DNA of 64,000 bases, taken from NCBI GenBank assembly GCA_026770705.1, contig JANJGN010000026.1:33604001-33668000 (forward strand), given 5' to 3'. Position 1 is the first letter of the stretch. The number at the start of each line of letters is the position of its first letter. The translations under genes were made by a program, and so were the position numbers. Positions 2,146 through 37,616 of the stretch are shown here, piece after piece. This stretch comes from Isurus oxyrinchus. Taxonomy: Eukaryota. Under the pieces are notes generated by a model, which worked only from the letters and a program-made list of their open reading frames with translations, was not told the origin of the DNA and did not search any database.

Positions 2146-2445
2146 CGACACCGTCTTCGCCCACTCTCTACAGCCTGGTCTCCTCCTGTCAGCAACACAA
2201 CCCCGACGGCTCCGTCACCTACGGCTGTTTGGCGATGGACTACTCCCCAGAAATCACCAGCCTGACCTGGAAGAAAGATGGGCAGTCGATCGCTACTGGA
2301 TTTAAGACTTACCCGTCAGTGAGAAACCAAAAGGGAACTTTCACCCTGAGCAGCCAGTTAACCATCACCGAGTCAGAGGGAGAATGCAGCAAAATCAAGT
2401 GTGAGGTTCGATACAGCGGCTCAGACAAGAGCATTGAAATGCACT
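2146..2445 (+). CDS. IGHM: IgM heavy chain constant exon CH1
   Basis: cccag acceptor 2141-2145, gtaag donor 2446; open frame (A)[45 protein letters not shown]...[16 protein letters not shown] with C1-set Cys/Trp/Cys and light-chain-binding Cys; resembles shark Cmu1. Confidence 0.95.
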
Positions 2446-2659
2446 GTAAGTGTTGGGGAACCTGTGAGAAACAGAAAGGCTGTGATTGACCTGTATAGAG
2501 TCTTGGCTGTAACGCATTTATAATACTCTGCATTGTTCTGATCCCTGGAAATTCCAAGTTCGTGTCCATTGACCGCAAAGAGCCTGTTAAAATATAAGAA
2601 CTTATTGTATCTGTTATCAATTTCTTCTGCAAGAAATGGCTAACCTTTGTTTTTTGAAG

Positions 2660-2974
2660 GTCCTCGTCCTGACTTACCTCCAACTGTTCTCCTCACCGTG
2701 AGTTCCAGGGATGAAATCACAACCAAAAAATTTGCAACCGCCGTCTGTTCAATCATCGATTTCCGTCCGAAGCCAATCACCGTGAAGTGGCTGAAAAATG
2801 GACAACCCATGAATTCAGGAATTGTCACCTCTCCCGCCTTTGAAATGAATGGGAACTTCTCGGCGACCAGTCGGCTGCAAGTCTCCGCTGGGGAATGGTT
2901 CAGCGATGCGGTCTATACCTGTCAGATCACTCACCAAGGGGTCACCCAAAGTCGAAACGCCACCAAGTGTGAGG
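2660..2974 (+). CDS. IGHM: IgM heavy chain constant exon CH2
   Basis: aag acceptor, gtaaga donor 2975, phase 1; [10 protein letters not shown]...[21 protein letters not shown]...[10 protein letters not shown]. Confidence 0.95.
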
Positions 2975-3598
2975 GTAAGAAATACAAACTGTGGAAGCAA
3001 TAGATCATTCTGCACACCGGTGTTAATCAAATCAGGAATTTATTGGAGTTAGTAGAAAGCACGAAACAACATCTAATTTACTATCATATAGTTGGTGTTT
3101 CATTCCGATGTAAGGGCTGCATTCGGATTATTCACCATTCAGGATTTGATCACATCACGTCTCTGCACTGACGTCATAGAGTGTGTGAGGTGGACTTGAT
3201 ATCAGCTTTACCTTGAGTCAGCTGATCATATTTGGAGAGGCAGAAGGTGTCTGGAACCCTTCACTGGTAACAGCTTCGAGACAGAGTGTTGGAAAGTGCA
3301 CCCACCCTTTTTATAAAACATATTTCAGTCCTGCATTCCAGGGCCCAGGAATGATACATTTGTATTGGGAATGGGGCAACGCAGATTTATGAGAATGTTA
3401 CCGGGGCTGAACGACTTAAATTATGAGAACAATTTACACAGACCAAGCTGGTTTTCCATTGTGTAAAGAAGATTAAAAACGATAGTTAGAGGTTGATATG
3501 TCCAAGGTGATTTATTCTCCTTCAGGGAGTGAAGACTGAATACTGCTGTCCTGCTTCTGAAAGTGAAACTTTGGTTGATTTTCATTTCTGTCTCACAG

Positions 3599-3910
3599 GT
3601 GATCACCAATGCCTCAACGATCCCACAATTACTCTATTGCCACCTCCAATAGAACAAGTCTTACTGGAGGCGACCGTGACCTTAACCTGCATCGTTTCTA
3701 ATGCTCCTTATGGAGTCCTCGTGTCCTGGACACAAGAGAAGAAGCCTTTGAAATCAGAGATTGCCGTCCAACCGGGAGAGGATCCCGACAGCGTGGTCAG
3801 CAACGTAAACATCTCGACACAAGCCTGGCTGAGTGGGGCTGAGTTCTACTGCGTGGTGAGCCATCAGGATCTGCCGACTCCTTTAAGAAGTTCCATCCAC
3901 AAGGAACCAG
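3599..3910 (+). CDS. IGHM: IgM heavy chain constant exon CH3
   Basis: cacag acceptor, gtgag donor 3911; [34 protein letters not shown]...[13 protein letters not shown]. Confidence 0.95.
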
Positions 3911-4624
3911 GTGAGCGGTGAGATTGAAGCAATAAGTTGTTCAATGTGTCTATTTCCAGTGTAAATGTAAGGATCAATATTTACTATTCAGTGTATTCAT
4001 GGTCTACTCTGATTAGCAATTTCGCCAACGAAACGCCCTGGGCCTGTGGACTTTCAGGAGGAAATTGATAAGTAGATGAATGAACAATGAATTGAAGGCT
4101 GTGCCATTGGGTTTAGATGAAGCAAGATGGGAGGAGCCTGGTGCGAAGCTGAAACACCAACATGGACCAGTTGGGCAGAATGGCCTGTTTCTATGCTGTA
4201 AACTTTGAGAAACTTTCTCGTCCAACCCTATAAGTTCTCAAGGAAAAGGATTGTGCCACCTCTGCTCCGAGCTGGAAAGCCGGACAGATCCCAAACTATT
4301 TTATTTATTAATTCATGGGATGTGGGCGTCGCTGGCTGGGCCAGAGTTATTGCCCATCCCTAATTGCCCTTGACAAGGTGTTGGTGAGCTGCCTTCTTGA
4401 ACTGCTGCAGTCCATGTGGTGTAGATACACCCACAGTGCTGTTAGGAAGGGAGTTCCAGAATTTTGATTCAGCTATAGTGAAGGATCGGTGATATATTTC
4501 CAAGAAGTGGATAATGAAAAACCTTAATATTCATCACAAAACACGTTACTCTCACATCTAACCAGTGGTTTCATTGTCTATGAATGTATCCAGTTTATTA
4601 ACATTTATTGTACATTTTCTGCAG

Positions 4625-5016
4625 TTAAAGACCCGCGGGAACCGTCCGTGTCTGTCCTCCTGCCCTCGGCAGAACATGTCTCCGCTCAGGGATTCGTCTC
4701 CCTCAGCTGCTTAGTGACAGGTTTCTCCCCGCGAGAGATTTTCGTCAAGTGGACTGTCAATGACAAGCCGGTGAATCCCGGGAACTACAAGAACACCGAG
4801 GTAGTGGCGGAGAACGGCAATCGCTCCTTCTTCATGTACAGCCTGTTATCCATTGCAGCGGAGGAGTGGGCCAGCGGAGCTTCTTACTCCTGTGTGGTGG
4901 GACATGAAGCGATCCCCTTGAAGATCATCAACAGAACGGTTGATAAATCCAGCGGTAAACCGAGTTTTGTGAACATTTCCCTTGCACTGATGGACACCGT
5001 TAATTCATGTCAATGA
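4625..5016 (+). CDS. IGHM: IgM heavy chain constant exon CH4 plus secretory tailpiece (internal donor for the membrane form after 4954)
   Basis: [38 protein letters not shown]...[23 protein letters not shown]|[20 protein letters not shown]; NIS sequon and penultimate Cys; AGC G|gtaaac donor. Confidence 0.96.
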
Positions 5017-5043
5017 GAATCTCTCGGTTACATTTCAAACTTC

Positions 5044-5060
5044 AATAAAAAAATAATAAA
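5044..5060 (+). promoter_or_regulatory. Polyadenylation signals for secreted IgM mRNA
   Basis: AATAAA at 5044-5049 and 5055-5060, just after the tailpiece stop. Confidence 0.8.
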
Positions 5061-5439
5061 GTCCTTTTCTCCAATCGTGATTTAAATACACAGTCGTTTA
5101 AGTAATGTTGTTTTCCAATTTTGCTAATTTTAGACGTGTTTTGTTAAAATCGGATACTCACAGGGCTCAGACCCAAGTCTTGTACATCCAGTGCTCCCAG
5201 CTCAGATACACCCTGGGTTCGAGACAGAGTAAAGCTCATTCATTACAGGATTATGCAAAATAGCTTCACCAGCTCTCCTCCAGCTGAGGAGAAATCTGAC
5301 AATTTCTCATTTCCAATAAACAAACACAGCACATTTAGTTCTCGGTGTTCCTGCTTCTCTTGTCTTCCATCCCTTTAAAATGGATGTCAGCTTTAAGCTT
5401 CTGCACCACACCCACGGGGAACTGAAGTGAGGGTCACGC

Positions 5440-5960
5440 AGAAATATGTCCCAACAATCCCCCATCAGAGAGACGGGGAAGGGAAATTGTTACCCCATTG
5501 CACCTCCACCTCCCCAACAGAGAGAGGGGGAGCGGAAATTGCTAACCCACTGTACCCCGACTTCTCCAACAGAGAAAGGGGAGGGGAAATTGTTAACCCA
5601 ATGTACCCCCACTTCCCCAGAGAGAGTGGAAGGGGACATTGTTAAACCACTGCACCTTCACTTCCACAACAGCAGGTGGTGGTGGGGGGGAATTGTTTAA
5701 CCACTGTACCCCCACTTTCCCAACAGAGAGAGGGGAAGGCAAACTGGAAAACCACTGTACCTCCACTTACCTGAGATAGAAAACTGAAAGGAAAATTTTA
5801 AGCCAATTTTATCTCCACTTGCTAAACAAAAAGACAAGGAAGGCCATTGGTTAACCCGGTGTGTCTCCACCTTCTCAACAGAGAGAACCGAAAGGGAAAT
5901 TGCTTAGACAACCAGACAGAGCAAAACTATTAACTCACTGGACCCTCAGTCCCCTAGTAG
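5440..5960. repeat. Degenerate ~55-60 bp tandem repeat in the CH4-TM1 intron
   Basis: Recurring GGGAAATTGTTAACCCACTGTACCCCCACTTCCCCAACAGAGAG-like units. Confidence 0.75.
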
Positions 5961-6379
5961 AGAATCTGGAAGGGAATGGGTCTCTACTATAAGGACTCAG
6001 TTAACAACAGTCGAAGTCAGCTTCTAGCTTACTGGCCACAGATTTTAAACTCCCATCATGCTTGGGATGTTGTAAAAACGTCTACTTATGCAACATAACT
6101 TGAAGATGTTTTAACACTCTTGCCCTGTTAAGCTTATGCTAAGATTGATTTCCCATCATCCAAATCTAAACTGGTGACTGAATCCTCCCTGGGTTGTTCA
6201 AGGTTCTGTCCCTGAATTTTTATGAGGCACATGGTTGATTCTTTGCATTCGTTCATCTGATATCACCTTGCATCTCACAGAAAACATGTTTATACACAGA
6301 ACTTTGAAAATATTCACCGGATTTTTCACCGTCAAGGTCAGACTCGATCATTGGTATCTGGTGAACTTTGGAAAAATAG

Positions 6380-7500
6380 TAAAAATACACACAGCTGACA
6401 CAAATTGACAAACAAAAAACACGTCTACACACACACATAGGCACAGACACACAGACACAAATGCACACAGGTACAAGCAGACACATGTACACCAACACAT
6501 GCGGAACCACACAAAGACAGGCAGACACACATAGACAAATATACACACACGTGCACACACACGCAGACACACACGCACACAATCACAAACACATGGACAC
6601 AGACGCACAAACATACACAGACACACACGTACACACATAAACAAATACACACGCACAATCACACACATTCATAAACACACACACAATCACACACATTCGG
6701 AAATACACACACTGACACACTCGCTCACACACATATACACAATCACAAACACACACAAACAGATAAAACCAGACAAGCAGACTCATACAAGGATACAAAG
6801 CACAAATGTAACTTTTAGCATATGCATTATCACACGTTCACAATGAAAGAAATACAGACAGAAAGACACACACGATCGTACTCATTAAAACAATGCATGG
6901 ACATACAGTAACACATGCACACACATGAGCAGACAACACCCAGATACAAAAACACAGAGGAACCGACTAACACATTCACAGACACCCATGTGGACACAAA
7001 CATGAACATACTCATACACACTAGAACACAAAAAACACACGTTGGTACATATGAAAACATAAACACGCATTGATACATAGTTCTAAATATCGATCAACAC
7101 ACAAATGCACACATTAAAAACCCTATTTCTCTCTCGCTGTGTCATACACACAGACGCTGTGACACAGACATTAATATGCTGACACACAGTGGAACACAAA
7201 AAGACACATTAACACTCATATTAGCAGGCAGGAACTCGTAAACACAAATTAACTCAGATAGTAATAAGTCAACATAGACAACAATACACAAACACGCACA
7301 ATAACACACTCATACATACACATCAGCAGAAAAACCAAATATACATACAGACGCAGACACAAAAATACACAAATCAGCACTCATTAGCACATGAACACAC
7401 ATATTAACACACATGCACACCTATGGACACACAAGCAACCAGTAATGCAAAGTGCGAGATACTCGTGCAGACACTCACAAAAGCTAAAACACAACACAGA
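6380..7500. repeat. CA-rich low-complexity tract
   Basis: Imperfect (CA)n runs; produces spurious Cys/Val ORFs on the minus strand. Confidence 0.9.
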
Positions 7501-8033
7501 GGCCAGGCTATTGAAAGTATAATTCAAATGTACTTTTCTAACGGGCATATCCTCCGGCAATTGTCTCTATTACATAATAACCCAATAAACACTCTGAAAC
7601 AATGCTCCTACTGAGAAACTGATTTAAATTAATGATGCACCAAACATTCCCATCACAAATAGACAAACAAGATGGGAACTCACATCCGAGATTATAAAAA
7701 GCAACGTCCACAGTTTCCAAATAAGTAGCTCAGTGAATCTCTCCCGATACCCATCATAATATTCTCCAATAATAGATCATATGAAATTGTTCGAAAATAA
7801 CCTGATACTGGAGAAAATTTGCCATATTTTCTGACATGGACTGTATAAAGATTGTAAAGGGAGAACAGCTGTGGAGATAGTTACAGAGATGGGTTACTGA
7901 GTGTCACTTAATAGTAGATATACATTGAACATTGAATACATTAATAACTTATGACAGAGTAAAGGAAATATTTTTAAAATGATAGCCTAGATTAATAAAC
8001 AAGCTAATTATATTTCCTCATATATTCCCGTAG

Positions 8034-8161
8034 ATTCCACAGACCGCATCTGGATTGAAGACTCTGAGGATGATAACAGCAACATCTGGACAACTGCTTC
8101 CACATTCATCATCCTGTTCTTCCTGAGCATTTTCTACAGCACTGCCGTCACTCTGGCGAAG
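8034..8161 (+). CDS. IGHM: IgM membrane exon TM1
   Basis: tag acceptor, gtgag donor 8162; (D)[42 protein letters not shown] with acidic spacer and conserved mIg transmembrane motif. Confidence 0.95.
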
Positions 8162-8299
8162 GTGAGAAGATTCAATCCACTCACACTTCAAACTGACAGA
8201 AGCGGTTTGAAACATCTCTCAATGTTTCATTGATTAGAACTCTAACATAAGTGTCCCAGATTATAAACATCTGCTTCATTATTTCATCCTCTTTTACAG

Positions 8300-8308
8300 A
8301 TCAAGTGA
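8300..8308 (+). CDS. IGHM: IgM membrane exon TM2 coding part (IK*), giving cytoplasmic tail KIK
   Basis: cttttacag|ATC AAG TGA; AATAAA downstream at 8724 and 8760. Confidence 0.88.
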   Translation: MK

Positions 8309-9952
8309 CCGGTTGAATTTTGGACACCATAGATTTTCCTCAGCTCTTTATTGAGATCTCTGTATTCCGAATTTAAAATATATCCTCTCGGTGACTGTAA
8401 AAATGAAATACCTTCAGTTTCTGTTTCCCAATTTGTAACTGAGACAATCATGAACAGTATTTCCGTTTCTCTGTTTCAAACGTGCGAGATAATCGTGATT
8501 CATTGCAACAGCAGCTTATAATTTCCCACTAGTTTGAATTCCCTGTGTAAATAAGTAACTTTTCTCATTCCTCATTCACAATTAATCCCTTCCCTTTATA
8601 TTGAGCTCCTGTTTTCTCTTTCTGGTGTCTGTTACAGTTGTACACGCAGTTGGCAGCTCAGAGTGAATGTGCTCTGTTCTCAATGTGACCCTCAGTCATT
8701 ATATTCACTTCAGTTAACTTTAAAATAAACTTTTCTGTAAAATGTTCCCTGAAATTGTTAATAAATCATGAATGTGAAACGAACTGACTTTGCTGAACTC
8801 CTTTCTCTCAGACCCATCGACACCGCTCCATTTTCCCTATTACACAGCTTTCCCCCCTTTCCCAGGCAGGCATTTTTAACCAGTCTTGTCTGGGATCTGA
8901 AACAAAAACAGAAAATGTTGGAAAAACTCAGCAGGTCTCAGCATCTGTGGAGACAGAAAACGGAGTTAACGTTTCGAGTCCTCATGACTTCTTCAGAGCC
9001 CGAGATCCTTCAGTGAAAGAGTCACCGCGCCACCCAGCGGCCCATCGGTGTTAATACACCTTTACCTCTGCCTTTTTATGGCAAATTCCAGAGGCAAAAT
9101 GATTGCACAGCGAGGAGAATCTCGGTGATTTCACTCATACTCAGGCCTCTCACAGTCACATGTCAGGTAATTGTAAACAGCAGGGATCAGCTTAATCCGA
9201 GGTCCATATAGGACAGTATATGGAGGATGAAAGTTTCCTTTACACTGTCTCATTAAACACTCCCAGCGTCGGTGCAGCAGGGTTTAGATAGAGAGAAAAA
9301 GTTTTGTTTTTCCCCTCTTTATCCTTTCATGAGATATGGGTGTCGCTGGCAAGGCTGCTCTGAACAGTCCGTCTTCCGAGGCCATTTCAGAGGGCAGTTA
9401 ACTGTCAACCGCATTGCTGTGGACCTGGAATCAGATGTCGGCCAGGCCAGATGAAGATGACAGATTTCCTCCCCGAAAGGACTTGAGTGCAGCAGATGGG
9501 TTTTTACGACATTCGGTGATAGTTGTCATGGTCACCATCACTGAGGCCAGTTTTCAATTCCAGATTTTATTAATTGAACTCACATTCCAGCAGCTGCCAT
9601 GTTGGGATTTGAAGCCCAGCCCCCAGAGCATTCACCTGGACTCTCTGTACCTTGTCCGATTAAACACTCACAAGGCAGAGTCGTCACAGGCCGCCTTCTC
9701 AAGTCTATTAGGGATGGGCAAAAAATGCTGGCCCAGACAGCCGTGCCCACACCGCATAAACGAATAACAAAAAATACGTATATACCACACACAGTACAGT
9801 TGCTACAAACATTTGGATGATTCCTAGAGACTAGGGCCGATCGAAGAGCAATTCTGCAAATTATTACCACAGTTTGGGGCTTATCAGGGACACCAGGGAG
9901 CACAAATCGTGGAAATTCCCAGGCCCTGCGGCCTGCCTGATGCAACAAACAA

Positions 9953-10386
9953 CTGAACTCACTAAGCATCTCCCCAGGGATCCTCTCTTCCTGTTCCATT
10001 CCATCTGATACCATCCTCCTGAATTCACTGAGCATCACCCCAGGGGTCCTCTCTCCCTGCTCCATTCCCTCTGACACCATCCTCCTGAACATCACCCCAG
10101 GGGTCCTCTAATCCTGCTCCATTCCCTCTGACACCATCCTCCTGAACATCACCCCAGAGATCCTCTCTTCCTCCTCCATTACCATCCTCCTGAACTCACA
10201 GAGCATCACCCCAGAGATTCTCTCTCCCGGTTCCATTTCCTCTGATACCATCCTCCTGAATTCATTGAACATCACTCCAGGGATCCTCCCTTCCTGCTCT
10301 ATTCCCTCCATTACCATCCTCCTGACCTCTCTGAACATCACCCCAGGGATCCTCCCTTCCTGCTCCATTCCCTCTGATACCAGCTC
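9953..10386. repeat. Minisatellite, ~7 copies of a 66-bp unit (48- and 57-bp variants)
   Basis: Unit CTGAACTCACTGAGCATCACCCCAGGGATCCTCTCTTCCTGCTCCATTCCCTCTGATACCATCCTC. Confidence 0.9.
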
Positions 10387-10506
10387 AAATGGGAAGCTTC
10401 AACTCTCACTCCACTGATTCTGGCAGAGGCTGTTAAGCATTTTCAGTTTTAAACTAATAATAAGAACTCTCTGTTTAAGCAGTGTGACATGAGCAAAGAA
10501 CCCTCA

Positions 10507-10578
10507 TTCCCAAACCAGAAATTTAATCCGGGCTGCGGCATTGAAAGGGCCAAATTCTAACCACATGGCCACCAGGGA
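10507..10578 (-). pseudogene. tRNA-Glu pseudogene
   Basis: Reverse complement TCCCTGGTGGCCATGTGGTTAGAATTTGGCCCTTTCAATGCCGCAGCCCGGATTAAATTTCTGGTTTGGGAA resembles vertebrate tRNA-Glu; B box damaged. Confidence 0.7.
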
Positions 10579-11890: not shown

Positions 11891-11943
11891 AGTGTTTTTT
11901 GAATCAGAAATTGGTTTCTGGTTGTGATATTTTGCACTACAGC

Positions 11944-12005
11944 GAGACCGGGAATCAAACCTGGGCGATGAGAACACCAGATCATAACCACTAGGTCACC
12001 AGGGT
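11944..12005 (-). pseudogene. tRNA-Glu(CTC) pseudogene with internal deletion
   Basis: Reverse complement CCCTGGTGACCTAGTGGTTATGATCTGGTGTTCTCATCGCCCAGGTTTGATTCCCGGTC. Confidence 0.65.
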
Positions 12006-13150: not shown

Positions 13151-13185
13151 GATAACGTTCAATCCTAATTACTGAATCCTAATTA

Positions 13186-18219: not shown

Positions 18220-18690
18220 AGACTGTTAACTCGCTGTGATGTTTTCCCTTCCCACATTCGGAGCAGGTTAATGGCCTCTCCACAGTGTGAACTTGCTGGT
18301 GTCTCAGCCGATAGATGTATGAGTGAATCCCTTCCCACACATGGAGCAGGTTAATAACTTCCCACCAGTGTGACTGCATTAGTGAATTTCCGGCTAAGAT
18401 GGGTGATTCAATCCTTCCTCACATTCCCCACATTTTACAGATTCTCATCAATGTAACCATGCTTGTATTTCAACAGGCCAGATGATGCATTGAATCCTCG
18501 TCCACACACAGGACACGTGTACAGTTTCTCCCCACTGTGAACGGTGCTTTTTCCTTCCATGTTCAAACTCTGATGATATTCAGGCTACGATAAACTGGGC
18601 GACTCAGCCAGATCCTAGTGTGATGTTGGTTTGAGTTTCCTGACTGCAAATCTTCCCCTCCTAATACCCTGTGAAAATGATTTAAAACAG
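18220..18690 (-). pseudogene. C2H2 zinc-finger gene remnant
   Basis: VLGGEDLQSGNSNQ... then [23 protein letters not shown] (ATG 18560) followed by decayed fingers; paralogous to the ZNF at 28.3 kb. Confidence 0.75.
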
Positions 18691-19149
18691 AAAAACGGGA
18701 GAGAGGGAGAACCCACAAAAACACAAAGGCAGGTTGTGAAATTGAACTGAAAATTTGGAAATTTGTGGGACAGACACTACAGCAAAATGACATTCAAAGC
18801 TGTTGGATTGTCAAAACAATTCAACTGGTTGACTAATGTTCATCAGAGAAGGGAACCTTACACTCAGTCTGGGCCTACACAAGACCTCTATAGGAGGAGA
18901 GAGGCGGAGACAAAGAGGGAGATAGAGAGAGAAAATGAGGGAGAAATGCAAAAGGAGAGATAGAGAGTGATGTAAGAGGGTAAGGTTCAGAGGGAGAGAG
19001 AGATAGAGAGAGAGAGAGGTGAGAGTGGCAGGGGTGAAAGAGAGGGATTTCATATCAGCTCGACCAGAACTTTAACAGAACGTCTCGAACCCTGAATCTA
19101 CACCATCTAGAAGGAGCAAGGTAACAGGTGTACACAAACGCACGCACCA

Positions 19150-22560: not shown

Positions 22561-23404
22561 GAAGCGTCTGTAAATGGAGAGAAAGTGGTAAAAGTTAGGG
22601 AGCGTCTCTAGAAATGGTGATTGTCAGGAAATGTCTGCAAATGAAGGAAATAATGACTGAGCATGGAGTGCTTAAAAACTAAGGGAACGTGCTGATGAAC
22701 AGGGAATGTCTGTAAAGAATCATTGAGTCATAGAATTGTATAACACTGTTACCAGAGAAGAAGATGATGCTTGACCTTGAACCTTTGCACTCTGTGTGGT
22801 GAAACTGCTCCCACATTTCTGTGAGATAAGGAGTTACAGGAATTTCACTCAGTGATGATGAAGGAATGGTGACATGTCCAAATCAACAACAACAATGTGT
22901 GTTTATATGGCGCCTTTCTTGTAATAGAAAACTCCAAAGTGTTTCACAGGAGTTTTATGAAGCAACTTTTGCCACTGAGCCCACAGAAGGAGATGTTTGG
23001 CTAGATGACCAAAAGTTTGGTCAGAGATTGGTTTTAAGAATTATCTTGGAGGGTATGAGGCTGGAGAAAATCACAGAGATAGGAAGGAGCGATATCCTGA
23101 AGAGATTTGAGAGCAAAAATGATAAATTTAAAATTTAAGTGCTTCTTAGCCTGGAAACGTACCTCAGTGAGCATGATGGTGATGAGTAAACAAGACTTGG
23201 TGGAGTAAGCACATGGGCAGCAGAGTTTTGAATGACCTCAAGATCACAGGGAGGTTTAATGTGGGAGGCCAGCTGGGATTGCGTTAGGATAGTTAAGTCT
23301 ATAGGTAACCAATGAATAGATAAGAATTTCAATTGCAGAGCAACTGAGACTAGGATGGAGTTGGATGATACTGAGGTGGAAATGGGCAGTCTTGGTGATG
23401 ATAA

Positions 23405-24610
23405 AGGGGAGCCTGTAGACAAACTGTACTTGGATTTCCAGAAGGCATTTGATAAAATGCCACATCAAAGGTTATCGCGACAAATAAAAGCTCATGGTGT
23501 AGGATGTAACATGTTAGTATGGATAGAATATTGGCTGGCTGGCAGAAAACAGAGAGTATGCATAAATTGGTCTTTGTTGATTGGCAGGATGTGATGCGTG
23601 GAGTCCCACAGGATCTGTGCTGGCACCTCAACTTTTTACAATTGATATCAATGACTTAGATGAGGGGAGAGAAGCCATTGTAGCTAAATTTGCAGATGAC
23701 ATGAAGATATGTAGAAATGTATGTTGTGAAGAGGACATAAGGAGGTTGCAGACGCATATAAATAGGCTGACTGATTGGGCAGAGATCTGGCAAATGGAGT
23801 TTAATATTGGAAAATGTGAAGTTATTCACTTTAGCAGGAAGAATAAAAAAGCAGAGTGTTACTTAAATGGAGAATGACTGCAGAATTCCAAGGTGCAGAG
23901 GGATATAGGTGTTCTAGTGCATGAGGCACAAAAAGTTAGTATGCAGGTATAGCAAGTAGTTAAGAAGGCTAAGGGAATGCTTTTCTTTATTACGAGAGGA
24001 ATTGAACATCAAAGCAAGGATGTTATGCTTCAGTTATACAGGGCATTGGTGAGACCACATATCAAATACAGTGTGCAGTTTTTGGTCTCCTTATTCAAAG
24101 AAAGATGTAAATACATTGGAGGTGGTTCAAAGGAGGTTTACTAGATTTCTACCTGGATGAGCGGGTTGTCTTTTGAGGATAGGTTGGACAGGTTGGGCTT
24201 GTTTCCACTGGAGTTTAGAAAAGGGAGGGGTGACTTGATTGAAGTATATAAGATCCTGAATGGTCTTGACAAGGTGGATATGCAAAGGATGTTTCCTCTT
24301 GTGGGTGAGTCCAGAACTAGGGGCATTGTTTTGAAATTAGGAGGCGCCCTTTTAGGACAGAGATGAGGAGAATTTTTTTCTCTGTGGACTCTGGAACTCC
24401 CTGCCTCAGAAGTCAGTGGTGGTGGAGTCATTAAATATTTTTAAGGCAGAGGTAGATAGATTCTTGTTAGGCACAGGAATCAAAGTTTATCGGGGGGTAG
24501 ATGGGAATGTGGAATTTGAAATGCAAGTAATCAGTCATGATTATATTGAATGGCGGCGTGGGCTCAAGGGGCTGAATGACCTAGTTATTCTCCTATTTTG
24601 CATGTTCGCA
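23405..24610 (+). mobile_element. CR1-type LINE fragment (RT and 3' UTR)
   Basis: YLDFQKAFDKMPH, GVPQGSVL-like, KFADDMKI, LDRLGLFPLEFR. Confidence 0.9.
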
Positions 24611-24764
24611 TGATGCAGATATGTGGTTTGAAGGTCAGTTTGGGGTGAAACATGACACCGATGTTGTGAACAGTCTGGTTCAGCCTCAGACAGTTGCTGG
24701 AGAGATGATGGAGTCTGTGGCTGTGGAGTGGAGAAGGGACTGAAGACAATGGTTTCAGTTATCG

Positions 24765-28275: not shown

Positions 28276-29170
28276 GTTTTTAGAAGGGGAGGTTTTCGAA
28301 TCCGGAAACTCAAACCAAGCATCACATCAGGATCTGACAGAGTCATCCAATTTATCATAATCTTAAACATCATCAGATTTTGAACATGGAAGGAGAAAGC
28401 ACCATTCACAGCAGAGAGAAACCGCACACGTGCCCTGTGTGTGGACGAGGCTTCAGCCGATCATCTGGCCTGTCGAAACACAAGTGCAGTCATGCAGGGG
28501 AGAAACCATGGAAATGTGGAGACTGTGGGAAGGGATTCAGATCCTCTTCTGAGTTGGATACTCATTAACGCACTCACACTGGGGAGAAGCCGTTCATCTG
28601 CTCCATATGTGGGAAGGGATTCATTTGGTCAGCAAACCTGCTGACACACCAGCATGTTCACACTGGGGAGAGACCGTTCACCTGCTCCGAGTGTGGGAAG
28701 GGATTCACTCATTTATCGTCCCTGCTGAGACACCAGCAAGTTCACACTGGAGAGAGGCCATTCACATGCTCTGCGTGTGGGAAAGGATTCACTGATGCAT
28801 CCAACCTGTTGAGACACCAGCAAGTTCATACTGACAAGAGACTTTTTAAATGCCCAGACTGTGGGAAGTGCTTTAAAAGTTCTGGGCTCTGATGTCGCAT
28901 CAGCATGTTCACACTGATGAGAGACCTTTTAATTGTCCAGAATGTGGGAAATGCTATAAAAGGTTCTGGGAACTAATGTTCCATCAACGTGTTCACACTG
29001 ACAAGAGACCGTTCAGGTGCTCTCACTGTGGGACTGGGTTCAGGAGATCACCTGAACTCACTGTACACCAGCGAGTTCACACTGGGGAGAGACTGTTCAC
29101 CTGCCCCGAGTGTGGGAAGAGATTCACACAGTCATCCATCCTGATGAGACACCAGCAAGTTCACAACTAA
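28276..29170 (+). pseudogene. Tandem C2H2 zinc-finger gene (9 fingers), disrupted
   Basis: Repeated CxxC...HxxxH with HTGE(K/R)PF linkers; stops at 28358-28360 and 28566-28568 and a frameshift near 28888. Confidence 0.9.
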
Positions 29171-29230
29171 CTCTTTCGAGTACAAACACGTTTCCATCTG
29201 TTTCAGATGAAGTTACATTGTTTCATAGTT

Positions 29231-29302
29231 TGTCATTGTGAGATTTGAACTCTTGATCTTGGGGTTACAAACCCAGTACCATAACCACTTGGCTATTTAG
29301 GC
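29231..29302 (-). mobile_element. tRNA-like sequence / SINE head (TGT loop)
   Basis: Reverse complement GCCTAAATAGCCAAGTGGTTATGGTACTGGGTTTGTAACCCCAAGATCAAGAGTTCAAATCTC with A and B boxes; poor stems. Confidence 0.5.
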
Positions 29303-29489
29303 CAAACCCCACAAGTAACTACAGTGATTGGATTTCGCTGTTAATCACATTCAGGACTGAACCATGTTCTTTGGGGTCTATTTCTGCTGAATGTTAATCA
29401 ACTCCAAACCAGTTGTAGTTGTTAGTATTGTTGAAATTTAAAAAAGATTAGTTTTGTGTAAAGTACACAGTGAGGCGAATCTTTTTAAT

Positions 29490-30610
29490 CTCTCTAACTC
29501 ACGAAGTTCCTTTTGAAGGGCTCTCCCTCTCCTCTGTCTTCTCCATACTCACCCCCAACAAGTGTGAGGAGCTCATGGAGCTTCTTTGTCACTAAGATTG
29601 AGACAATCCCATCTGTTGACTCTGCTGCTTCCCTCTCATCCACTGGCCAATCGGGCAAAACTATCTTTAAAGCTCCTCCTTGTCCGAGCCCTGAACTTAC
29701 ATCTTTCCCCAGTTTCTCTTCTATCTCTCCCTCATTCCCTTCAGTGCTCATCTTATCCATGAGACCCACCTTCTGCTCCACTGACTCTAGTCCCACTAAG
29801 CTGCTGACCATTCAACTCTCGCTCTCTCCTGGTACTATCCCTCTATCTTTAATCCACCATCATCACCCATTCTATAAAAAAAAATCTTTAACCCCATCTC
29901 CAACTCCCTTTCCTCTCCAATGTCCTTGTACTTGGTGTCCCCCAAGGATCTATCCTTGGACCCTCCTGTTTCTCATCTACCCACTGCCACTAGGTGACAC
30001 CATCCAAAAGCACCACATAAGGTTTCAAATGTACACTGACAACTCACCCTCACCACCATCCCTCTCCATTCCTCCAATTACTAAATTATCAAACTACTTA
30101 TCCGACATCCAGTACTGAAATAAGCAGAAATTTCCTCCAATTAACAATTTGGAAGTCTTCAGTCACCATAATAAATTCTGTTCCCTAACTACCAAGTCCA
30201 TCCCTCTCCCTGGGAACTGTCTGAGGCTGAACCACACTCTTCATAATCTTGGTGTCATATTTCACCCCAAGATGAGTTTCTGACCACATACCCGCACCAT
30301 CACGAATACCAGATATTTCAATCTCCATAACGTCACCTGTCTCCCCCCGCACCCCAGCTCATGTGCTACTGAAACCCTCATCCATGCCCATGTTACCTTT
30401 AGACTTGACAATTCCAATTGACCAACCTCAATACATTCACCCCACCCCCACATGGAACCGTGAGATCATCCAAAACTCTGCTGCCTGTGTGCTTTCTCAC
30501 ATCAAGTCCTGTTCATCCATCACCCCTGTGCTCACTGACCTACATCGGCTCCTGGTCAAACAATGCCTCGATTTTAAAATTCACATTCTTGATTTCAAAT
30601 CCCTCCATGG
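29490..30610 (+). mobile_element. L2-type LINE fragment; sits where the leader of the next V would be expected
   Basis: FFVTKIETI, GVPQGSILGPLLFLIY-like, IIQNSAACVL. Confidence 0.8.
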
Positions 30611-30730
30611 CCGTCTATCATCTGAATTATATCTACATCAATATAACACTGTCTGTGAACTATTGCTGTCAGTTCAGTTCAATTGAAGTAATACTCTCTG
30701 ATTTCCTCTTCCTTTGATCGTGTGTTCCAG

Positions 30731-31034
30731 ATCTGAGCAATGGAGATTCTGTTACTCAGCGCGAATCCTCGCTCACACAGGCAGAGTGAGAAGATGTCGC
30801 TTTAACCTGCATCTTTACTGGCGATGGTTATTACTTATCCTGGTGCTGTCAATACCCAGACAGACAGCCCGAGTTTGCACTCCAGAGACACATGGGCGGT
30901 GATTCTGAATTTAAGGCGGATTTTGCTTAGAGCCGGTTTTCTGATACATTCCAGCAGACAGACAGATTGTACCGATTGACCTTCTCGGAGCTGCGGCTGT
31001 CTGACACCGCAGTATATTACTGTGCACTGAGTCT
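30731..31034 (+). pseudogene. TCR alpha/delta V pseudogene
   Basis: ccag acceptor; LSNGDSVTQRESSLTQAE*EDVALTCIFTGDGYYLSWCCQYPDRQPEFALQR...ADFA*SRFS...ELRLSDTAVYYCALS; two stops; degenerate heptamer catagcg and no nonamer. Confidence 0.88.
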
Positions 31035-33743
31035 CATAGCGATTGTTCCTCGTTCAATAACTGCTGCAGCTTTCTGGGTTACAGCTTCTCTCTGTTGAGG
31101 GCTGTTTACCACAGCGGGTCAGACACTGTCACGTGAATCCATTCCTACTAGCAATAAAACAAGCACAAGAACAAGTACAACAAAAACTGCATCTGAAATC
31201 GGTCCCTTTGATTGCTGACCCTCTTCCCGATGATTGCATTAACGTTATGGGGGCTGAATTGGCTGCTCGCCATTCCCCATTTCCCAAAACTATCTCCAGA
31301 CCCTTTCCTGGAACCGTTCTACTAGTTTAGCTTCAGAGGCAGTTCGTGGCAAACAGAAAAGGAATAATTGTTCTGAAACATCAGTCTGCAGTGGAAACAG
31401 CAGTACTCCAAGCTATAAGGGCGTAATAATTATATGAACCAGTAAATGTTCCTAAATGTAAAAGAAATTTGGACATATTAAAACAGAGCATGTGTAATCT
31501 GAGCAGTTCCTGAAAGTGTGCTGCCATCTTGCGGGAGAAATCAGAATTGTCCCCGTCATTGTTTCCTTCAGTTCAGAGAACTGTTGTTCAGGAATTATCT
31601 TCCGAAGACACTCAAAGGGCACAAATCCCTACGGCAATCCTCATAAGCGCCATCTAATTACGTTCATGTTGAACAATGGCTCTCTCTTTGATGATTGCAT
31701 GAACGGAATGAGGGCAGAATTTGCTGCTCCTTATTCCCATTAAGAAAACACACTCCCACCCGCTTTCCTGGTGCCAGTTCAGTTGGTTTCCCGCTTCTTC
31801 TGACATGGCTGCAATAATTGGTTGTTTCTACCGGCCTGCAGGGGAAGCAGAAGTCCGCCAGCTCGAGACGATTCGAATAATTTGATGAGCCTGTTTAAAT
31901 GTCCCTCAGTGTTAAAGACTTTCGGACATATTGAAAAGAATTATCCGTTTCTGAGGTGTTGCTGCCACCTGGTGGAAGCAATCAGAATGCCGCGGGCAAT
32001 ATTTTCTTCAATTCAGAGCGACTGCTTAGGAGTAATATTTCTAGGAGACTCAAAAGGTAAGTAAGATCGATTGTTGTAATTCTATATCGTGATATTACTA
32101 TAGTTGCTGCACTAGGGTGTACCTCTTTTTATATCACATTACACTGAGTGGTCAGCATTGATTGTTGCCTGAATATACAATGTGTGAAGGCGTAAGTTTG
32201 GTGAGTGAGGGTGTTCAGTGAAGATACAAATTAATTAATCAAAATAAATGTAATTCGCTCAATAAAGATGGCAGGAGAGGTGATGTGTCTCGGCTGCAGC
32301 ATGTGTGAGCTACTGGCTTGCACTGCAATCCATGGCAACCACATAAGACCATAAGACTTAGGAGCAGAAGTAGGCCATTCGGCCCATCGAGTCTAGGTCC
32401 GCCATTCAGTGAGATCATGGCTATTCTGATAATCCTCAACTCCACTTTCCTGTCTTTCCACTATCACCCATGATTCACTTACTTACTGTATTTCTCAACC
32501 TTGGATATATTTAACGACCTAGCCTCTTTGGTAAACAATTCCACAGATTGACGACCCTCTGAGAGAATAGATTCCTCCTCATCTCTATTTTAAGTGGGGG
32601 GCCCCATTACTCTGCGATTATGCCCACCCCCACCCCCCCCCCCCCCCCCCCATCCCACGTCCTAGGAAACCCTGTGCCACTCTGCGTAACATCTGTCGCT
32701 TGTAAAATGCTAGAGTCAATTATTAAGGAAGTAGTAACAACCTAACTAGTGTCTTACAAATGTTCAACATGACATGTTCAACTCTTTTCCACAATGCCCC
32801 TATTAATAAAGCCTAAGATACTGTATGCTTTATTAACTGCTCTCTCAACATGCTGTGCCATCTTCAATAGCTTATGTACATATATATATGCAGGTTCCTT
32901 TGTGCCTGCATCTCCTTTTGAGTTTGTCCCTTTATTTTATACTATTTCTCCATATTCTTTCGGCCAAAATGAATTGCATCACACTTCTGTGGCATTGAAC
33001 TTCTTCTGGCAAACCACCCACGTCTCTATGTCCTTCTGAAGTTCAAATCTATCCCAAACAAAATTCACAAAGTTTCCAATCTTTGTATTATCTGCTAGTC
33101 TTGGAATCTATCTCAGAACAGCACAATCTAGTTTCTTACATCCAGGTCACCATAAGAAGACAAGTGTTATTCGTGGGAGCGTTGCTGAGCTGGAAGTCAG
33201 TGAATAGAAGCAGCTCGAGCTGCGCTGCAGCCAGTGTCCTCATTGTGGGAATAGTTCAGCTGCTAGAGACCGGGGTTGGGCATAAGAGTCCGGTACGTTC
33301 ATTAGGGACTGTCTCGATGTCCTGGGCCCACATCCCACCTTTAACAAACACCACCCAATACGAACTCATGCACCGACCTCCCGGTTCATCACTGTGGGGT
33401 AAGGAGGGCGGCAGCACAACTGGCAGAAAGAAAAGCTCCCTAACCCCAGCCCTGTACAACAGAGTATTGTGGGAGGGGATTTCACATCCGGATCACAATC
33501 CCAATGTAGAGTCAGAAAATTGCAGCCTCCTTTTATAAACCTGTCTCTTATTCACAAAACATTTAGCCAGCGACCCGAGAACCGTGCGGCCCATCAATGA
33601 TCTCAGCTAAGCTGCCCTTTGTAAATCAACTCGATCCCCTAAGGTGTTTCAGTCCAGCCCTGAAGTCCGGTCTCCCAGGGCAGTCCAGGGCTGCAGTCTC
33701 CAGCTCCCCGTCACATAAACCCCCAGCTCTAGGCAGCAGAGCG

Positions 33744-33786
33744 ATGGGAATCCTCCTTGTTTTCACCCTGTGTGTCTGTATACCCC
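33744..33786 (+). CDS. NAR-TCR V leader exon
   Basis: MGILLVFTLCVCIP plus phase-1 donor gtgagt, in frame with the V exon at 33935. Confidence 0.85.
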
Positions 33787-33934
33787 GTGAGTACCGATCA
33801 AACAAACCGACATTGTGTGGGTTTAATATAAAGCTGCTTGAGTCCATCCCAATTACAGACAATGTCTGCGGGTTTAACCCCGCTCCGTGGTTCGGCTCTG
33901 ATGGTCCATTACACTCTCTCTGTTTAATTTCCAG

Positions 33935-34222
33935 GCTCTTTCAGTCAGTCAGTGACACAGACCCCAGCAGCGGTGACCAGGAAGGAGTGTCAGTCTCTCA
34001 CCATCATCTGTGTTTATTATGGTTATTATTATTTACAAAATGGACACTTCTTCAAACAAACCCAGACCGGGACAGAGTGGGAGCGGATCTCCAGCGGGGA
34101 GAGATTTGTTGTGTCGGTGAATAAAGCAGGAAAGACATTTTCACTGGAAATTCGGGACATGAGAGTTGAAGACACCGCCAACTATTACTGTAAAGCTCAG
34201 TACAGATACAACATTGGTTAAT
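33935..34222 (+). CDS. NAR-TCR (IgNAR-like) V exon, possibly a germline-joined VD
   Basis: SFSQSVTQTPAAVTRKECQSLTIICVYYGYYYLQNGHFFKQTQTGTEWERISSGERFVVSVNKAGKTFSLEIRDMRVEDTANYYCKAQYRYNIG*; short FR2-CDR2 region as in VNAR, extra FR1 Cys, YYCKA. Confidence 0.88.
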
Positions 34223-34250
34223 CACAGAGGAAAAGGCCTGAACAAATAGC
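34223..34250 (+). other. 12-RSS 3' of the NAR-TCR V
   Basis: CACAGAG + 12-nt GAAAAGGCCTGA + ACAAATAGC. Confidence 0.75.
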
Positions 34251-34564
34251 TCTGTACAATTAAAATATATATTCTCCGGGCCCAGATAGTGAATTGTCGG
34301 GTTGATGTTATCATCGCTGGAATCTGATTACGTTTTATTGTAATTTCCACCATTCCATTATCTTTCTTTGATATTTGTCTCGGTTTATATGAAGCGAACA
34401 TCTCGTTCCCTGGACCAGTTACTCAGCCCTCAGGGCCTCACAAAGCACAGTGTGAGCCGGCAGACATTTTGAAACATTGAATATTGTTTATTTTTTTCAA
34501 TCCGCTGAATATATGGCAGTTTCTACTGTCTGGTGATGATTTCCCGCCAGGTTGAGTTGTCGGT

Positions 34565-34603
34565 GGTTCTTGTGCCGGGGAGACTGAGAGCAGTGTTACT
34601 GTG
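34565..34603 (-). other. 23-RSS 5' of the NAR-TCR J
   Basis: GGTTCTTGT + 23-nt spacer + TACTGTG as read on +. Confidence 0.88.
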
Positions 34604-34656
34604 GTGGAAATATGATTCTGTGGATGGATCCGGTACGATGTTGACTGTCATAGCCG
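34604..34656 (+). CDS. NAR-TCR J segment
   Basis: WKYDSVDGSGTMLTVIA plus phase-1 donor gtaagt; DGxGT motif of NAR-type J. Confidence 0.9.
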
Positions 34657-37271
34657 GTAAGTGACTCCAGCCACCCTCCCCCTCACACCTGTTGCGGCCT
34701 GTCCTAGCTAATGTTCACCCGCTGCTTTTTATTGTGATCAGTGTCAGTTTAGTCCCACGAAAAGGAAAACAGATGGTTTTCATAAGGAAACCTCTCTGTT
34801 GGCTTTTTCGATTTGGGGGCAGAATATTATTCAGGAGCCGGGTCGAATGTCTAGGTGAAACTATGTGTGAGATCTGTCAGACTAGGTGGTCAACGGGATC
34901 AGGGTGGGTGGAGGATGGAGTGTGGGGACGTGAGGGAGGGGATTTTAAGTTTGGAGGAGCGTGAGGGTTCGCTGCATCTGAACCATTATTAGTTTCACTG
35001 GTACATTGGGGGCCATCAATCCCTCTGATTCACAATACTAATCATTTGTAAGTTTGGAATTGCTAACATTTATCTCTTTTGAATGTAGATTTTTGAGATA
35101 CTGGATTGCTTTAATTTATCTGTATCTGTGATTTCTGCAAATTAAAACAACACAGAGCAGTGGGAGAGTGAGGATGATGCACTAAACTGCTAGAAGGGAA
35201 CAGGAACATAAGAGAACAATAATAATCGAAACCAAGAGAAAGGTTGGATGATTTCTGGGGGCCGTTCAAAATTCTTCCTGGCACGAGTGTGGGGGGTGAG
35301 GTTTATGGAGGGAAAGGCTGCAATGGGTCCAGTCTGGAATGCTAGGTAAACGCTTGGCCTCTTTGTTAGGGAAAGATCTAAATCCTTTGGAGTGAGTGCA
35401 ACAAAGTTTCATCAGACTGATTGCTGAGATAAAGTCTTACGAGAAGAGATTGAGTTGTCTGGGTCTATATTGCCCCGGGTTTCGAGGAATTGAGATGTAA
35501 TCTCATTTGAAACATGTAATATGGAAGACAGGGCAGATTCCCGGTGGATGTTTCCCAAGGCTGGTAAGTCTATAACTATGGGTCAAAGTTTCAGAATAAA
35601 CATTCGGCCATTAGAACTCAGAAGAGGAGAAGTCAAACCATTGTTGTGAGTCTGTACCTCAGAGAGCTTTGGATACTCAGTGCTGACTGTACTTAGGACG
35701 GTATTCGATAGATCTTTGGATACTAAAAGAATGAAGGGATATGGGGGCACTGCTGTAATGTGATTTTGAGGATGGAGATCAGCGACGATGGTATTGAATG
35801 GCAGAGCAGGTTTGAAAGGTGCTATAGCGGCCTCTCCATCTCCTTGTTAGGTTCTCTGCTTTGATTTCTTACGTTCCTGAGAAATGCAATCAGCAACAAT
35901 CCACGTCTCTCTAGAACGATTGAACAGGCTGGGCCACTTTTCATTGTAAAAGAGGAAACCGAGGAGATATCAGAGAAACCTTTTAATTATGAATGTGTTC
36001 AATCGGGTGGATGTGGAGCAACTGGTAATTTGTGGCTGAGTCCAGAGCAATAGGAGATTATTATAAGGTAGCCACTAATTGAACATAAAAGGCATTAAGA
36101 AAAATACATTTGCATGAACACGTGTCAGAATGTGGAACTGGAGGTCACATGGAGTGGCTGGAGCAGAGAGCATTGATAGATTTATGGGAAGACTTCAAAA
36201 TACAAGAGGAAGAGCGGAATAAACAGGCAGAAGGATGTGGACCGAATTTGTCATTTAGATTTCGGGCAGGAAGGGCTGGTTTGGAGTGTAAACATAGGCA
36301 TCAATCAATTAGGCCGAATGGCCTATTCCTCTTCTGCAGATTGTGTATAATGTAAAACCTTCGAGAATACTCCGCTCAGAGAACCAGGGACAGAATCAGT
36401 CAATGAGCGGAAAGAATTGAAATTGTCAGAGAGCCGGAAGAGACAGCTCCCAGTGAGTAACAGGGAAACCACTGCGGAAACTGAACAGACTGATCCCAAC
36501 CGACAACTGAGAGAGATTGGGACAAGTTCCCACGATTGCAAAAAGCGCAAACAGCACATTAACGTAAAATAAAGTGAGAGTAACTGTAAATATTTCAAAT
36601 TAAAAGGACACGGAGAAATTTGGGCCCTCATGTTAGATGAATATAGAGAAACAGATCAAAAAGTTGATAGAAACTCCCGAGCAGTGGTCAACTCCAGCAA
36701 ATGATTAACCTTTGACCACCTATGTTCACTATCGGTTTGGCCCAATCAGTGCTGATGAATCTCATCAAGTTATTATGGATCTTGCTTTGATGCTAAACAG
36801 TTCGGTTAGTCTCGGGCAATCATTTTGGAAACTGATTGCTTCGCTGATAATAAAATGTTCCTTCTGGAAAAATAGAAACAGAAATGTAATATACATTACA
36901 TGCTGCACTGCAGTTGAAATCCGGTCCATCCTGTCGGTGCTGCCCCTCTAAAAATGCAACCCAATTATCCCCACTACTCTCTTTCCCCGTAGCCCTGTGT
37001 TTTTCCATGTTCCAACATTTATCCATTACTCGTTTGGAAAACACCCTTAACCAGTTTCACCGTCTGTTCAGACAATGCATGCCAAATAGTAAGAACTCGC
37101 TCTGAAACACAAAATAACACCTCATCCTTTCACTGCTTCATATTTCAATAACAGTGAATGAAGTTAAAGCAGGTTATAAATTAAACAAACTCACCCAAAA
37201 CCACAGCATCTACTGCGATTAACAAGTTTCCCAGTCTCTAAATAGATTAAGATCAAATTTTTCTCCTGCAG

Positions 37272-37577
37272 ATTCCAGTTCCATTGTATCCCAGAATCCG
37301 CCTGTCCAAACCTCTGCTGTGGGTGACACCGTTACTTTAAGCTGTGAGTATTCAGGTGTCTGTCAGTACACAGTACACTGGTACCGTCAGTCCCCAGGAC
37401 AGGCTCCGGATTACTTGCTTCAGAGACATGCTTCAGGAGAAGAGGATAAAGAAAACACTGTTGGGGGGAGAAGTTCTGCTTCTATCGATCCTGCCGAGAA
37501 AATCAGCCGGTTAAATATCTTCAAACTACAACTGAGCGATTCCGCTGGGTATTACTGTGCACTGAGTCAGCGCACAG
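37272..37577 (+). CDS. Supporting TCR delta V segment of the NAR-TCR cassette (no leader exon found)
   Basis: ctgcag acceptor, phase 1 matching the NAR J donor; SSSIVSQNPPVQTSAVGDTVTLSCEYSGVCQYTVHWYRQSPGQAP...LQLSDSAGYYCALSQRT; extra Cys in CDR1; open frame. Confidence 0.9.
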
Positions 37578-37616
37578 CACAGTGATACAGAGCACGGAGG
37601 GTGCCATACAAAAACC
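37578..37616 (+). other. Consensus 23-RSS of the supporting Vdelta
   Basis: CACAGTG + 23 nt + ACAAAAACC. Confidence 0.96.

What the first reader, a model, noticed from the sequence alone, without database searches (positions are those of the whole stretch)
2146..37616. Apparently intact IgM constant region ~25 kb from, and co-oriented with, a NAR-TCR/TCRdelta V cassette
Seen: all six Cmu exons are open with canonical splice sites and both polyA signals; TCR V material begins ~22 kb after TM2 on the same strand. Known: sharks make IgHV-TCRdelta chimeric rearrangements, and Ig V or defective Ig clusters have been reported in the nurse shark TCRalpha/delta locus. Inference: a functional IgM cluster could sit in or next to the TCRalpha/delta locus, so that one VH serves B cells as IgM and T cells by deletional joining to downstream Ddelta/Jdelta.
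Basis: partly seen in the sequence, partly recalled or inferred. Interest (0 to 1): 0.8.

Follow-up and report, generated by a model that had tools for sequence, protein, structure and literature searches.

The report
Shark IgM gene beside NAR-TCR cassette
An unbroken shark IgM antibody constant gene lies 25 kb upstream of, and facing the same way as, a complete-looking NAR-TCR T-cell-receptor V cassette, but a 2025 paper already described this antibody/T-cell-receptor neighbourhood in sharks, so this is a clean example and not a discovery.

Summary
Window 2146-8308 (+) carries a six-exon IgM constant gene (CH1-CH4, TM1, TM2). Every exon is open, all splice junctions are AG/GT in phase 1, there is an internal membrane-form donor, and there are two pairs of AATAAA signals. 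T-cell-receptor V material starts 22.4 kb after TM2 with a dead V at 30731. An anatomically complete NAR-TCR cassette follows at 33744-37616, on the same strand.

Linkage of IgM clusters to the TCR alpha/delta region, with TCR-type V exons between IgH clusters, was published for four elasmobranchs, a catshark among them (Flajnik et al. 2025, PMC12227049). This scan has also met the arrangement repeatedly on other DNA of this genome.

The proposed mechanism, deletional joining of the VH to a downstream Ddelta/Jdelta, finds no support:
- The remaining 26 kb of the window holds no other J-like motif and no constant exon apart from Cmu. D segments could not be searched.
- V segments lie on both strands, and four of seven are dead.
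- An unverified scan note puts the only noted Ddelta-Jdelta-Cdelta 3.67 Mb before the window.

The V-D-D-J lies outside the window.

Verdict: real, ordinary, already known. Interest is low.

The parts
2146..2445 (+). Cmu exon CH1 (phase 1; light-chain cysteine in LVSSC)
   Evidence: Sequence read, junctions, Pfam C1-set E 9e-10.
2660..2974 (+). Cmu exon CH2
   Evidence: Pfam C1-set E 3.4e-18.
3599..3910 (+). Cmu exon CH3
   Evidence: Pfam C1-set E 1.2e-8.
4625..5016 (+). Cmu exon CH4 with secretory tail. The internal donor for the membrane form lies after 4954. AATAAA at 5044 and 5055.
   Evidence: Pfam C1-set E 3.1e-21. 62-94% identical to cartilaginous-fish IgM CH4 pieces, with the tail conserved.
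8034..8161 (+). Cmu exon TM1 (acidic linker plus membrane span [27 protein letters not shown])
8300..8308 (+). Cmu exon TM2 (Ile-Lys-stop). AATAAA at 8724 and 8760.
30731..31032 (+). Dead V of the leaderless supporting-V type: two in-frame stops, Trp replaced, no RSS left
   Evidence: tblastn at 37% identity to the supporting V. Sequence.
33744..33786 (+). NAR-TCR leader exon (donor GT at 33787)
33935..34250 (+). NAR-TCR V exon (33935-34222) with its 12-spacer RSS (34223-34250)
   Evidence: Pfam V-set at 28 bits. Best solved-structure matches are shark VNAR domains, E 3e-17. Three 75-80% homologues share its unusual features.
34565..34656 (+). NAR-TCR J (34604-34656, ...DGSGTMLTVIA, donor GT at 34657) with its 23-spacer RSS (34565-34603)
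37272..37674 (+). Leaderless supporting V (37272-37577, acceptor AG in phase with the NAR-TCR J donor), consensus 23-RSS 37578-37616, second 23-RSS 37636-37674
   Evidence: Pfam V-set E 1.4e-15.
40962..41171 (-). Dead V fragment
48306..48621 (-). Dead TCR-type V: stop in FR3, second cysteine lost, 23-RSS 48306-48344 kept
50162..50706 (-). Open TCR alpha/delta-type V. Leader 50706-50667, V exon 50472-50169, perfect heptamer 50168-50162, weak nonamer.
   Evidence: Pfam V-set E 1.8e-12. Human TCR delta and alpha V domains are among the best solved-structure matches.
59914..60257 (+). Dead V (several stops) that keeps a consensus-nonamer 23-RSS at 60219-60257

Best explanation
This is the constant half of an ordinary shark IgM minilocus. 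It sits in the antigen-receptor complex of a shark chromosome, where IgH clusters and TCR alpha/delta-type V segments are interspersed.

The IgM gene most likely works like any shark IgM cluster. V-D-D-J joining happens within the cluster, upstream of the window. J is spliced to CH1-CH4. The secreted form uses the tail and the AATAAA signals at 5044/5055. The membrane form uses the internal donor after 4954, TM1, TM2 and the AATAAA signals at 8724/8760.

The neighbour 25 kb downstream is a separate unit, a doubly rearranging NAR-TCR cassette. Its NAR-type V (12-RSS) would join its own J (23-RSS). The J donor would splice to the leaderless supporting V, whose 23-RSS must join a distant Ddelta.

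Shown: the anatomy and the open state of both units. Inferred: their use. Nothing in the window ties the two units together functionally beyond proximity.
For: - Exon structure, phases, splice sites and polyA signals.
- C1-set on all four CH exons.
- CH4 and its tail are conserved against bamboo shark, elephant shark and other IgM pieces.
- NAR-TCR anatomy. NAR-type V by VNAR matches.
- Seven V-like segments on both strands, three open and four dead.
- The 9-30 kb spacer holds only old interspersed repeats (65-92% identity) and no gap.
- Small runs guessed to be RNA (49-98 million letters) hold 0.23-0.47 of the sampled words of 2100-5100. Exons make up 0.43 of those words. This fits transcription of a Cmu whose exons are word-identical to this one.
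Against: - The V-D-D-J is outside the window. Only an unchecked first-stage note (s1-868886) calls it intact, so the cluster could be defective upstream.
- No reads could be laid, so transcription of this particular copy is not shown. The run shares cannot tell it from paralogous clusters, and the runs are only guessed to be RNA.
- Contiguity of 9-30 kb was not checked with reads.
- The supporting V could not be assigned to TCR delta rather than Ig V by sequence. That assignment rests on its position and its splice anatomy.
Confidence: 0.85

Rival explanations
1. The cluster's VH is shared: B cells use it for IgM, and T cells use it by deletional joining to a Ddelta/Jdelta/Cdelta lying downstream on the same strand.
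For: - IgM/IgW V to TCR-delta D-J-C chimeras are known in nurse shark (Criscitiello 2010, as cited in PMC5931798, and in PMC12227049).
- From established knowledge, VH carries a 23-RSS like V-delta.
- The IgM gene and the NAR-TCR cassette are co-oriented.
Against: - No other J-like motif and no constant exon apart from Cmu in the 26 kb after the cassette.
- V segments are in mixed orientation and mostly dead.
- The only Ddelta-Jdelta-Cdelta noted on this piece lies 3.67 Mb before the window, upstream and not downstream (s1-871158; unverified, strand unknown).
- The VH itself is not in the window.
Confidence: 0.05
2. The Cmu belongs to a defective or orphan cluster. Its constant exons are still open, but it makes no heavy chain, like the relic clusters and dead V segments around it.
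For: - Four of the seven V-like segments in the window are dead.
- Scan notes describe several truncated or constant-less IgM clusters on the same chromosome.
- The first 2.1 kb upstream of CH1 hold LINE debris and no J.
Against: - All six exons, the splice sites and the polyA signals are unbroken, and the conserved residues are kept.
- A first-stage note reports an intact V-D-D-J just upstream (s1-868886).
- Small RNA-like runs hold essentially the exon share of words.
Confidence: 0.08
3. The juxtaposition is an assembly artefact that joins an IgM cluster to TCR V DNA across the repeat-rich 9-30 kb.
For: The spacer consists of interspersed repeats. I could lay no reads on it.
Against: - No N in the window, and no recent duplication or high-identity repeat at a possible joint.
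- The same neighbourhood is published for four species.
- It recurs at many places in this genome according to scan notes.
Confidence: 0.02

Closest known systems
Elasmobranch antigen-receptor complex (AgRC): IgM/IgW/IgNAR miniclusters linked to TCR alpha/delta (Flajnik et al., Sci Adv 2025, PMC12227049)
   Same: An IgM minicluster lies in cis with TCR alpha/delta-type V exons and a NAR-TCR V. Shark chromosome-level assemblies, a catshark among them, show TCR-type V exons between IgH clusters.
   Different: Nothing in kind. This report adds exon-level and RSS-level anatomy of one instance: spacing, strands, and which V segments are open. The paper's coordinate table (S1) was not held, so I could not check whether this very cluster is listed.
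Doubly rearranging NAR-TcR (Criscitiello, Saltis and Flajnik, PNAS 2006; described in PMC5931798)
   Same: A NAR-type V with its own J and RSS pair. The J carries a splice donor. A leaderless supporting delta V follows with an in-phase acceptor and its own 23-RSS.
   Different: - No free D is seen between V (12-RSS) and J (23-RSS). The V coding end runs nine codons past the cysteine.
- The canonical Trp is replaced (HFFKQ), and three homologues share this trait.
- The supporting V has two tandem 23-RSS.
- The cassette lies megabases from the noted Ddelta. Its use is untested.
IgHV-TCRdelta chimeric rearrangements and TAILV / VH-delta segments (Criscitiello 2010; Deiss 2019; as cited in PMC12227049)
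   Same: Physical closeness of VH and TCR delta elements, which the 2025 paper offers as the basis of such chimeras.
   Different: Here the Ig element is a complete constant gene of a cluster, not a lone VH inside the D-proximal TCR delta region. No chimeric transcript was examined.

Membership tests
Shark IgM heavy-chain constant gene (minicluster type) | Four C1-set constant exons in order, phase-1 junctions | tested here: met
Shark IgM heavy-chain constant gene (minicluster type) | Secretory tail with N-glycosylation site and penultimate Cys; internal donor in CH4 leading to TM1 and TM2; separate polyA signals for the two forms | tested here: met
Shark IgM heavy-chain constant gene (minicluster type) | Own V-D1-D2-J a few kb upstream on the same strand | not testable with these tools
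   It lies outside the window.
Shark IgM heavy-chain constant gene (minicluster type) | Transcribed and spliced in B-cell tissue | tested here: inconclusive
The word shares of small RNA-like runs fit exon content but are not copy-specific.
NAR-TCR cassette | NAR-type single V domain with a leader | tested here: met
   The top solved-structure hits are shark VNAR.
NAR-TCR cassette | Own RSS-flanked joining partner(s), and a J that ends in a splice donor | tested here: met
   12-RSS on V, 23-RSS on J, donor G|GTAAGT. No separate D was found.
NAR-TCR cassette | Dedicated leaderless supporting delta V downstream, with an acceptor in phase and its own RSS | tested here: met
   The 23-RSS has consensus heptamer and nonamer.
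NAR-TCR cassette | Expressed as NAR V - delta V - C delta chain | not tested
   No reads could be laid. No transcript data were to hand.
TCR alpha/delta locus proper (ordered V array leading to D-J-C delta) | D delta, J delta or C delta within reach downstream of the V segments, and V segments in consistent orientation | tested here: not met
   No other J-like motif and no constant exon apart from Cmu up to 64 kb (D segments not searchable). V segments lie on both strands and four of seven are dead. D-J-C delta is noted 3.67 Mb upstream (unverified).

The most novel reading that the evidence does not exclude
The NAR-TCR J at 34604 carries a 23-RSS, the same kind as a shark JH. By the usual shark grammar, the 12-RSS on the 3' side of the IgM cluster's D2 could therefore join it by a 35-45 kb deletion. 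That deletion would remove JH, Cmu and the NAR V. The result would be VH-D-D-J(NAR-TCR) spliced in phase to the supporting V: a three-domain VH-Vdelta-Cdelta chain, reminiscent of TCR-mu. An earlier scan note on another piece (s1-866940) raised the same geometry. Nothing here shows that it happens.
Probability: 0.04. Interest if true: 0.8.

Novelty: already known. Interest (0 to 1): 0.2.

Why it matters
That would bear on how the two receptor systems separated. As it stands, the window is a well-preserved, gap-free example of the published shark Ig/TCR neighbourhood. It is useful as an annotated reference instance: an intact Cmu next to an intact-looking NAR-TCR cassette. It is also a concrete place to test, with thymus and spleen RNA, whether proximity leads to cross-locus joins.

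Tried and rejected
- **Read laying.** There is no evidence from reads on expression, splicing or contiguity. The self-comparison left out 6500-6600. Local scripts read the window file only.
- **Contig look-up.** I therefore have no DNA of relatives, no exon-versus-intron comparison, and no route to the upstream V-D-D-J.
- **Exon searches.** CH4 found only 9 pieces, the best 94% identical and none exact. It gives no copy-specific transcript evidence. I left the third word search and the big representative search unused, because the protein's identity was not open.
- **Supporting V.** The solved-structure search for the supporting V returned mostly antibody scFv chains and does not separate TCR delta from Ig V.
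- **Papers.** The supplement of PMC12227049 (table S1, coordinates) is not held. PMC7039070, PMC7909615, PMC3222143 and PMC1458790 are not held.
- **Scan notes.** They did not give the strand of Ddelta-Jdelta-Cdelta or the place of the J-alpha array, so I could not settle deletional versus inversional geometry.
- **Other segments in the window.** A search for a D between NAR-TCR V and J, and for further J segments, found none beyond the NAR-TCR J.
Full report
**Observation**

The + strand of 2146-8308 carries a complete IgM constant gene. I read the sequence and checked every junction by script.

| Exon | Coordinates |
|---|---|
| CH1 | 2146-2445 |
| CH2 | 2660-2974 |
| CH3 | 3599-3910 |
| CH4 with secretory tail | 4625-5016 |
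| TM1 | 8034-8161 |
| TM2 (Ile-Lys-stop) | 8300-8308 |

- All acceptors are pyrimidine tract plus AG. All donors are GT. All junctions are phase 1.
- The internal donor AGCG|GTAAAC after 4954 joins TM1 in frame.
- AATAAA lies at 5044 and 5055, after the secretory stop, and at 8724 and 8760, after TM2.
- Each CH exon is a Pfam C1-set domain (E 9e-10, 3e-18, 1e-8, 3e-21).
- The intradomain cysteines and tryptophans, the CH1 light-chain cysteine and the tail [20 protein letters not shown] are all present.
- CH4 is 62-94% identical to IgM pieces of bamboo shark, elephant shark and unnamed assemblies. The tail is almost invariant.

The first 2145 bases are LINE debris with no J. The V-D-D-J must therefore lie further upstream, outside the window.

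**What lies downstream**

A tblastn with the window's own V and C translations, an RSS scan and a motif scan find seven V-like segments.

| Position | Strand | State |
|---|---|---|
| 30731-31032 | + | Dead, leaderless supporting type; two stops, RSS lost |
| 33935-34222 | + | NAR-type V, open |
| 37272-37577 | + | Supporting V, open |
| 40962-41171 | - | Dead |
| 48346-48621 | - | Dead; stop, cysteine lost, 23-RSS kept |
| 50169-50472 | - | Open; own leader, perfect heptamer, weak nonamer |
| 59914-60218 | + | Dead; 23-RSS with consensus nonamer kept |

The minus-strand V at 50 kb has human TCR delta and alpha V domains among its best solved-structure matches.

The 9-30 kb spacer has no N. 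It holds only old interspersed repeats of 65-92% identity and a broken C2H2 zinc-finger array at 28.4-29.2 kb. I found no constant-domain exon other than Cmu and no J other than the NAR-TCR J. These searches were blunt: tblastn with IgM domains and a J-motif regex that itself misses the NAR-TCR J. D segments cannot be found this way.

**The NAR-TCR cassette**

Its anatomy is complete.
- Leader 33744-33786 with donor.
- V exon 33935-34222, followed by a 12-RSS (CACAGAG, 12, ACAAATAGC).
- J at 34604-34656 (DGSGTMLTVIA), preceded by a 23-RSS and ended by G|GTAAGT.
- 2.6 kb further on, a leaderless V whose acceptor is in phase with that donor. It is followed by a consensus 23-RSS (37578-37616) and a second copy of the RSS (37636-37674).

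The first V is NAR-type: its best solved-structure matches are shark VNAR domains (E 3e-17 downwards). Three homologues from public assemblies (75-80% identity) share its oddities, so these are family traits and not damage. The oddities are HFFKQ in place of the canonical Trp motif, and a coding end that runs on past the cysteine (AQY...). Sequence alone did not separate the supporting V from antibody V domains. Its assignment rests on the cassette architecture.

**How it most likely works**

The IgM gene looks like the constant half of an ordinary autonomous shark minilocus. It has alternative secreted and membrane 3' ends. The NAR-TCR cassette is a separate doubly rearranging unit. Its NAR V would join its own J. 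The J donor would splice to the supporting V, and that V must reach a Ddelta. Anatomy is shown. Use is inferred.

Expression could not be tested properly. One indirect hint remains. Five small runs (49-98 million letters, guessed to be RNA, from several studies) hold 0.23-0.47 of the sampled words of 2100-5100. Exons plus 3' UTR account for 0.43 of the words. Runs that small cannot assemble a shark genome, so these are probably transcripts of a Cmu with word-identical exons. That does not single out this copy among paralogues.

The general idea, an IgM cluster in or beside the TCR alpha/delta region, is correct but published. Flajnik et al. [quoted passage not shown] - TCR alpha/delta-type V exons lie between IgH clusters.
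- This proximity explains the VH-to-Ddelta rearrangements found earlier in nurse shark.

This scan has also met the same arrangement many times on other DNA of this genome. The earlier follow-ups reached the same verdict.

The specific mechanism, deletional joining to a downstream Ddelta/Jdelta, is not supported.
- I found no other J-like motif and no other constant exon in the following 26 kb.
- The V segments point both ways and are mostly dead.
- The only Ddelta-Jdelta-Cdelta noted on this piece is 3.67 Mb before the window (s1-871158). That note is unverified and I do not know its strand.
- Notes also place TCR V fields and IgM clusters on both sides of that D-J-C, from about 8 Mb before to 5 Mb beyond this window.

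The picture is a large mixed complex, not a V array that leads to a nearby D-J-C.

**What is outside my reach**

A first-stage note (s1-868886) reports an intact IgM-type V-D-D-J in the 12 kb that end at position 2000 of this window. It also reports another NAR-TCR 46 kb from that V-D-D-J, in the opposite orientation. If both are true, this IgM cluster is complete and lies between two NAR-TCR cassettes that point in opposite directions. I could not check either.

**Most novel reading not excluded**

The NAR-TCR J has a 23-RSS like JH, and it lies downstream on the same strand. From established knowledge of shark clusters, the grammar is V23 / 12-D1-22 / 12-D2-12 / 23-J. The 3' 12-RSS of the cluster's D2 could therefore join that J by deletion. 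This would place a VH-D-D on the supporting V and give a three-domain VH-Vdelta-Cdelta chain. I give this about 4%. Thymus RNA would settle it.

**Verdict**

The arrangement is real, ordinary for sharks, and already known. Earlier notes call the genome a catshark, and one calls it a lamnid. I did not verify the species, and both are among those covered by the 2025 paper.

Noticed in passing
window 34189-34250 and 34565-34603: NAR-TCR V (12-RSS) faces its J (23-RSS) with no free D between them. The V coding end runs nine codons past the Cys (KAQYRYNIG) and ends in TAA just before the heptamer. Three 75-80% homologues have similar long ends, so this may be a germline-fused V-D family trait.
   Followed up: partly
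window 34040-34056 (NAR-TCR V, FR2): The canonical Trp of the W-Y/F-R/K-Q motif is replaced (G-H-F-F-K-Q). The F-F-K/R-Q form is invariant in all three homologues found, so it is a lineage trait and not a defect.
   Followed up: partly
window 37578-37674: The supporting V carries two 23-RSS 58 bases apart (37578-37616 with consensus heptamer and nonamer; 37636-37674).
   Followed up: no
window 30731-31032: A dead leaderless V that begins at a splice acceptor like a supporting V, with no NAR V relic found upstream of it. It may be the remnant of a second NAR-TCR cassette.
   Followed up: partly
window 28380-29170 (+), related copy 18245-18885 (-): C2H2 zinc-finger array broken over several frames (Pfam zf-C2H2, zf-H2C2_2), with a 76% inverted relative 10 kb away. 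Probably a decayed ZNF gene or a repeat-borne copy.
   Followed up: no
window 389-1588, 23401-24612, 61202-62257: Three copies, about 70-79% alike, of a LINE-like element with reverse-transcriptase-like ORF pieces. One lies in the J-Cmu intron.
   Followed up: no
window 50340-50400 (-): The open TCR-type V has an unusual cysteine run before the FR2 tryptophan (HDPCCCWYRLY) and a weak nonamer. It may be an open reading frame that is seldom used.
   Followed up: no
protein P0009: A 112-residue protein labelled Salmonella enterica in NCBI is 91% identical to part of this shark CH4. It is almost certainly contamination of that bacterial assembly.
   Followed up: no
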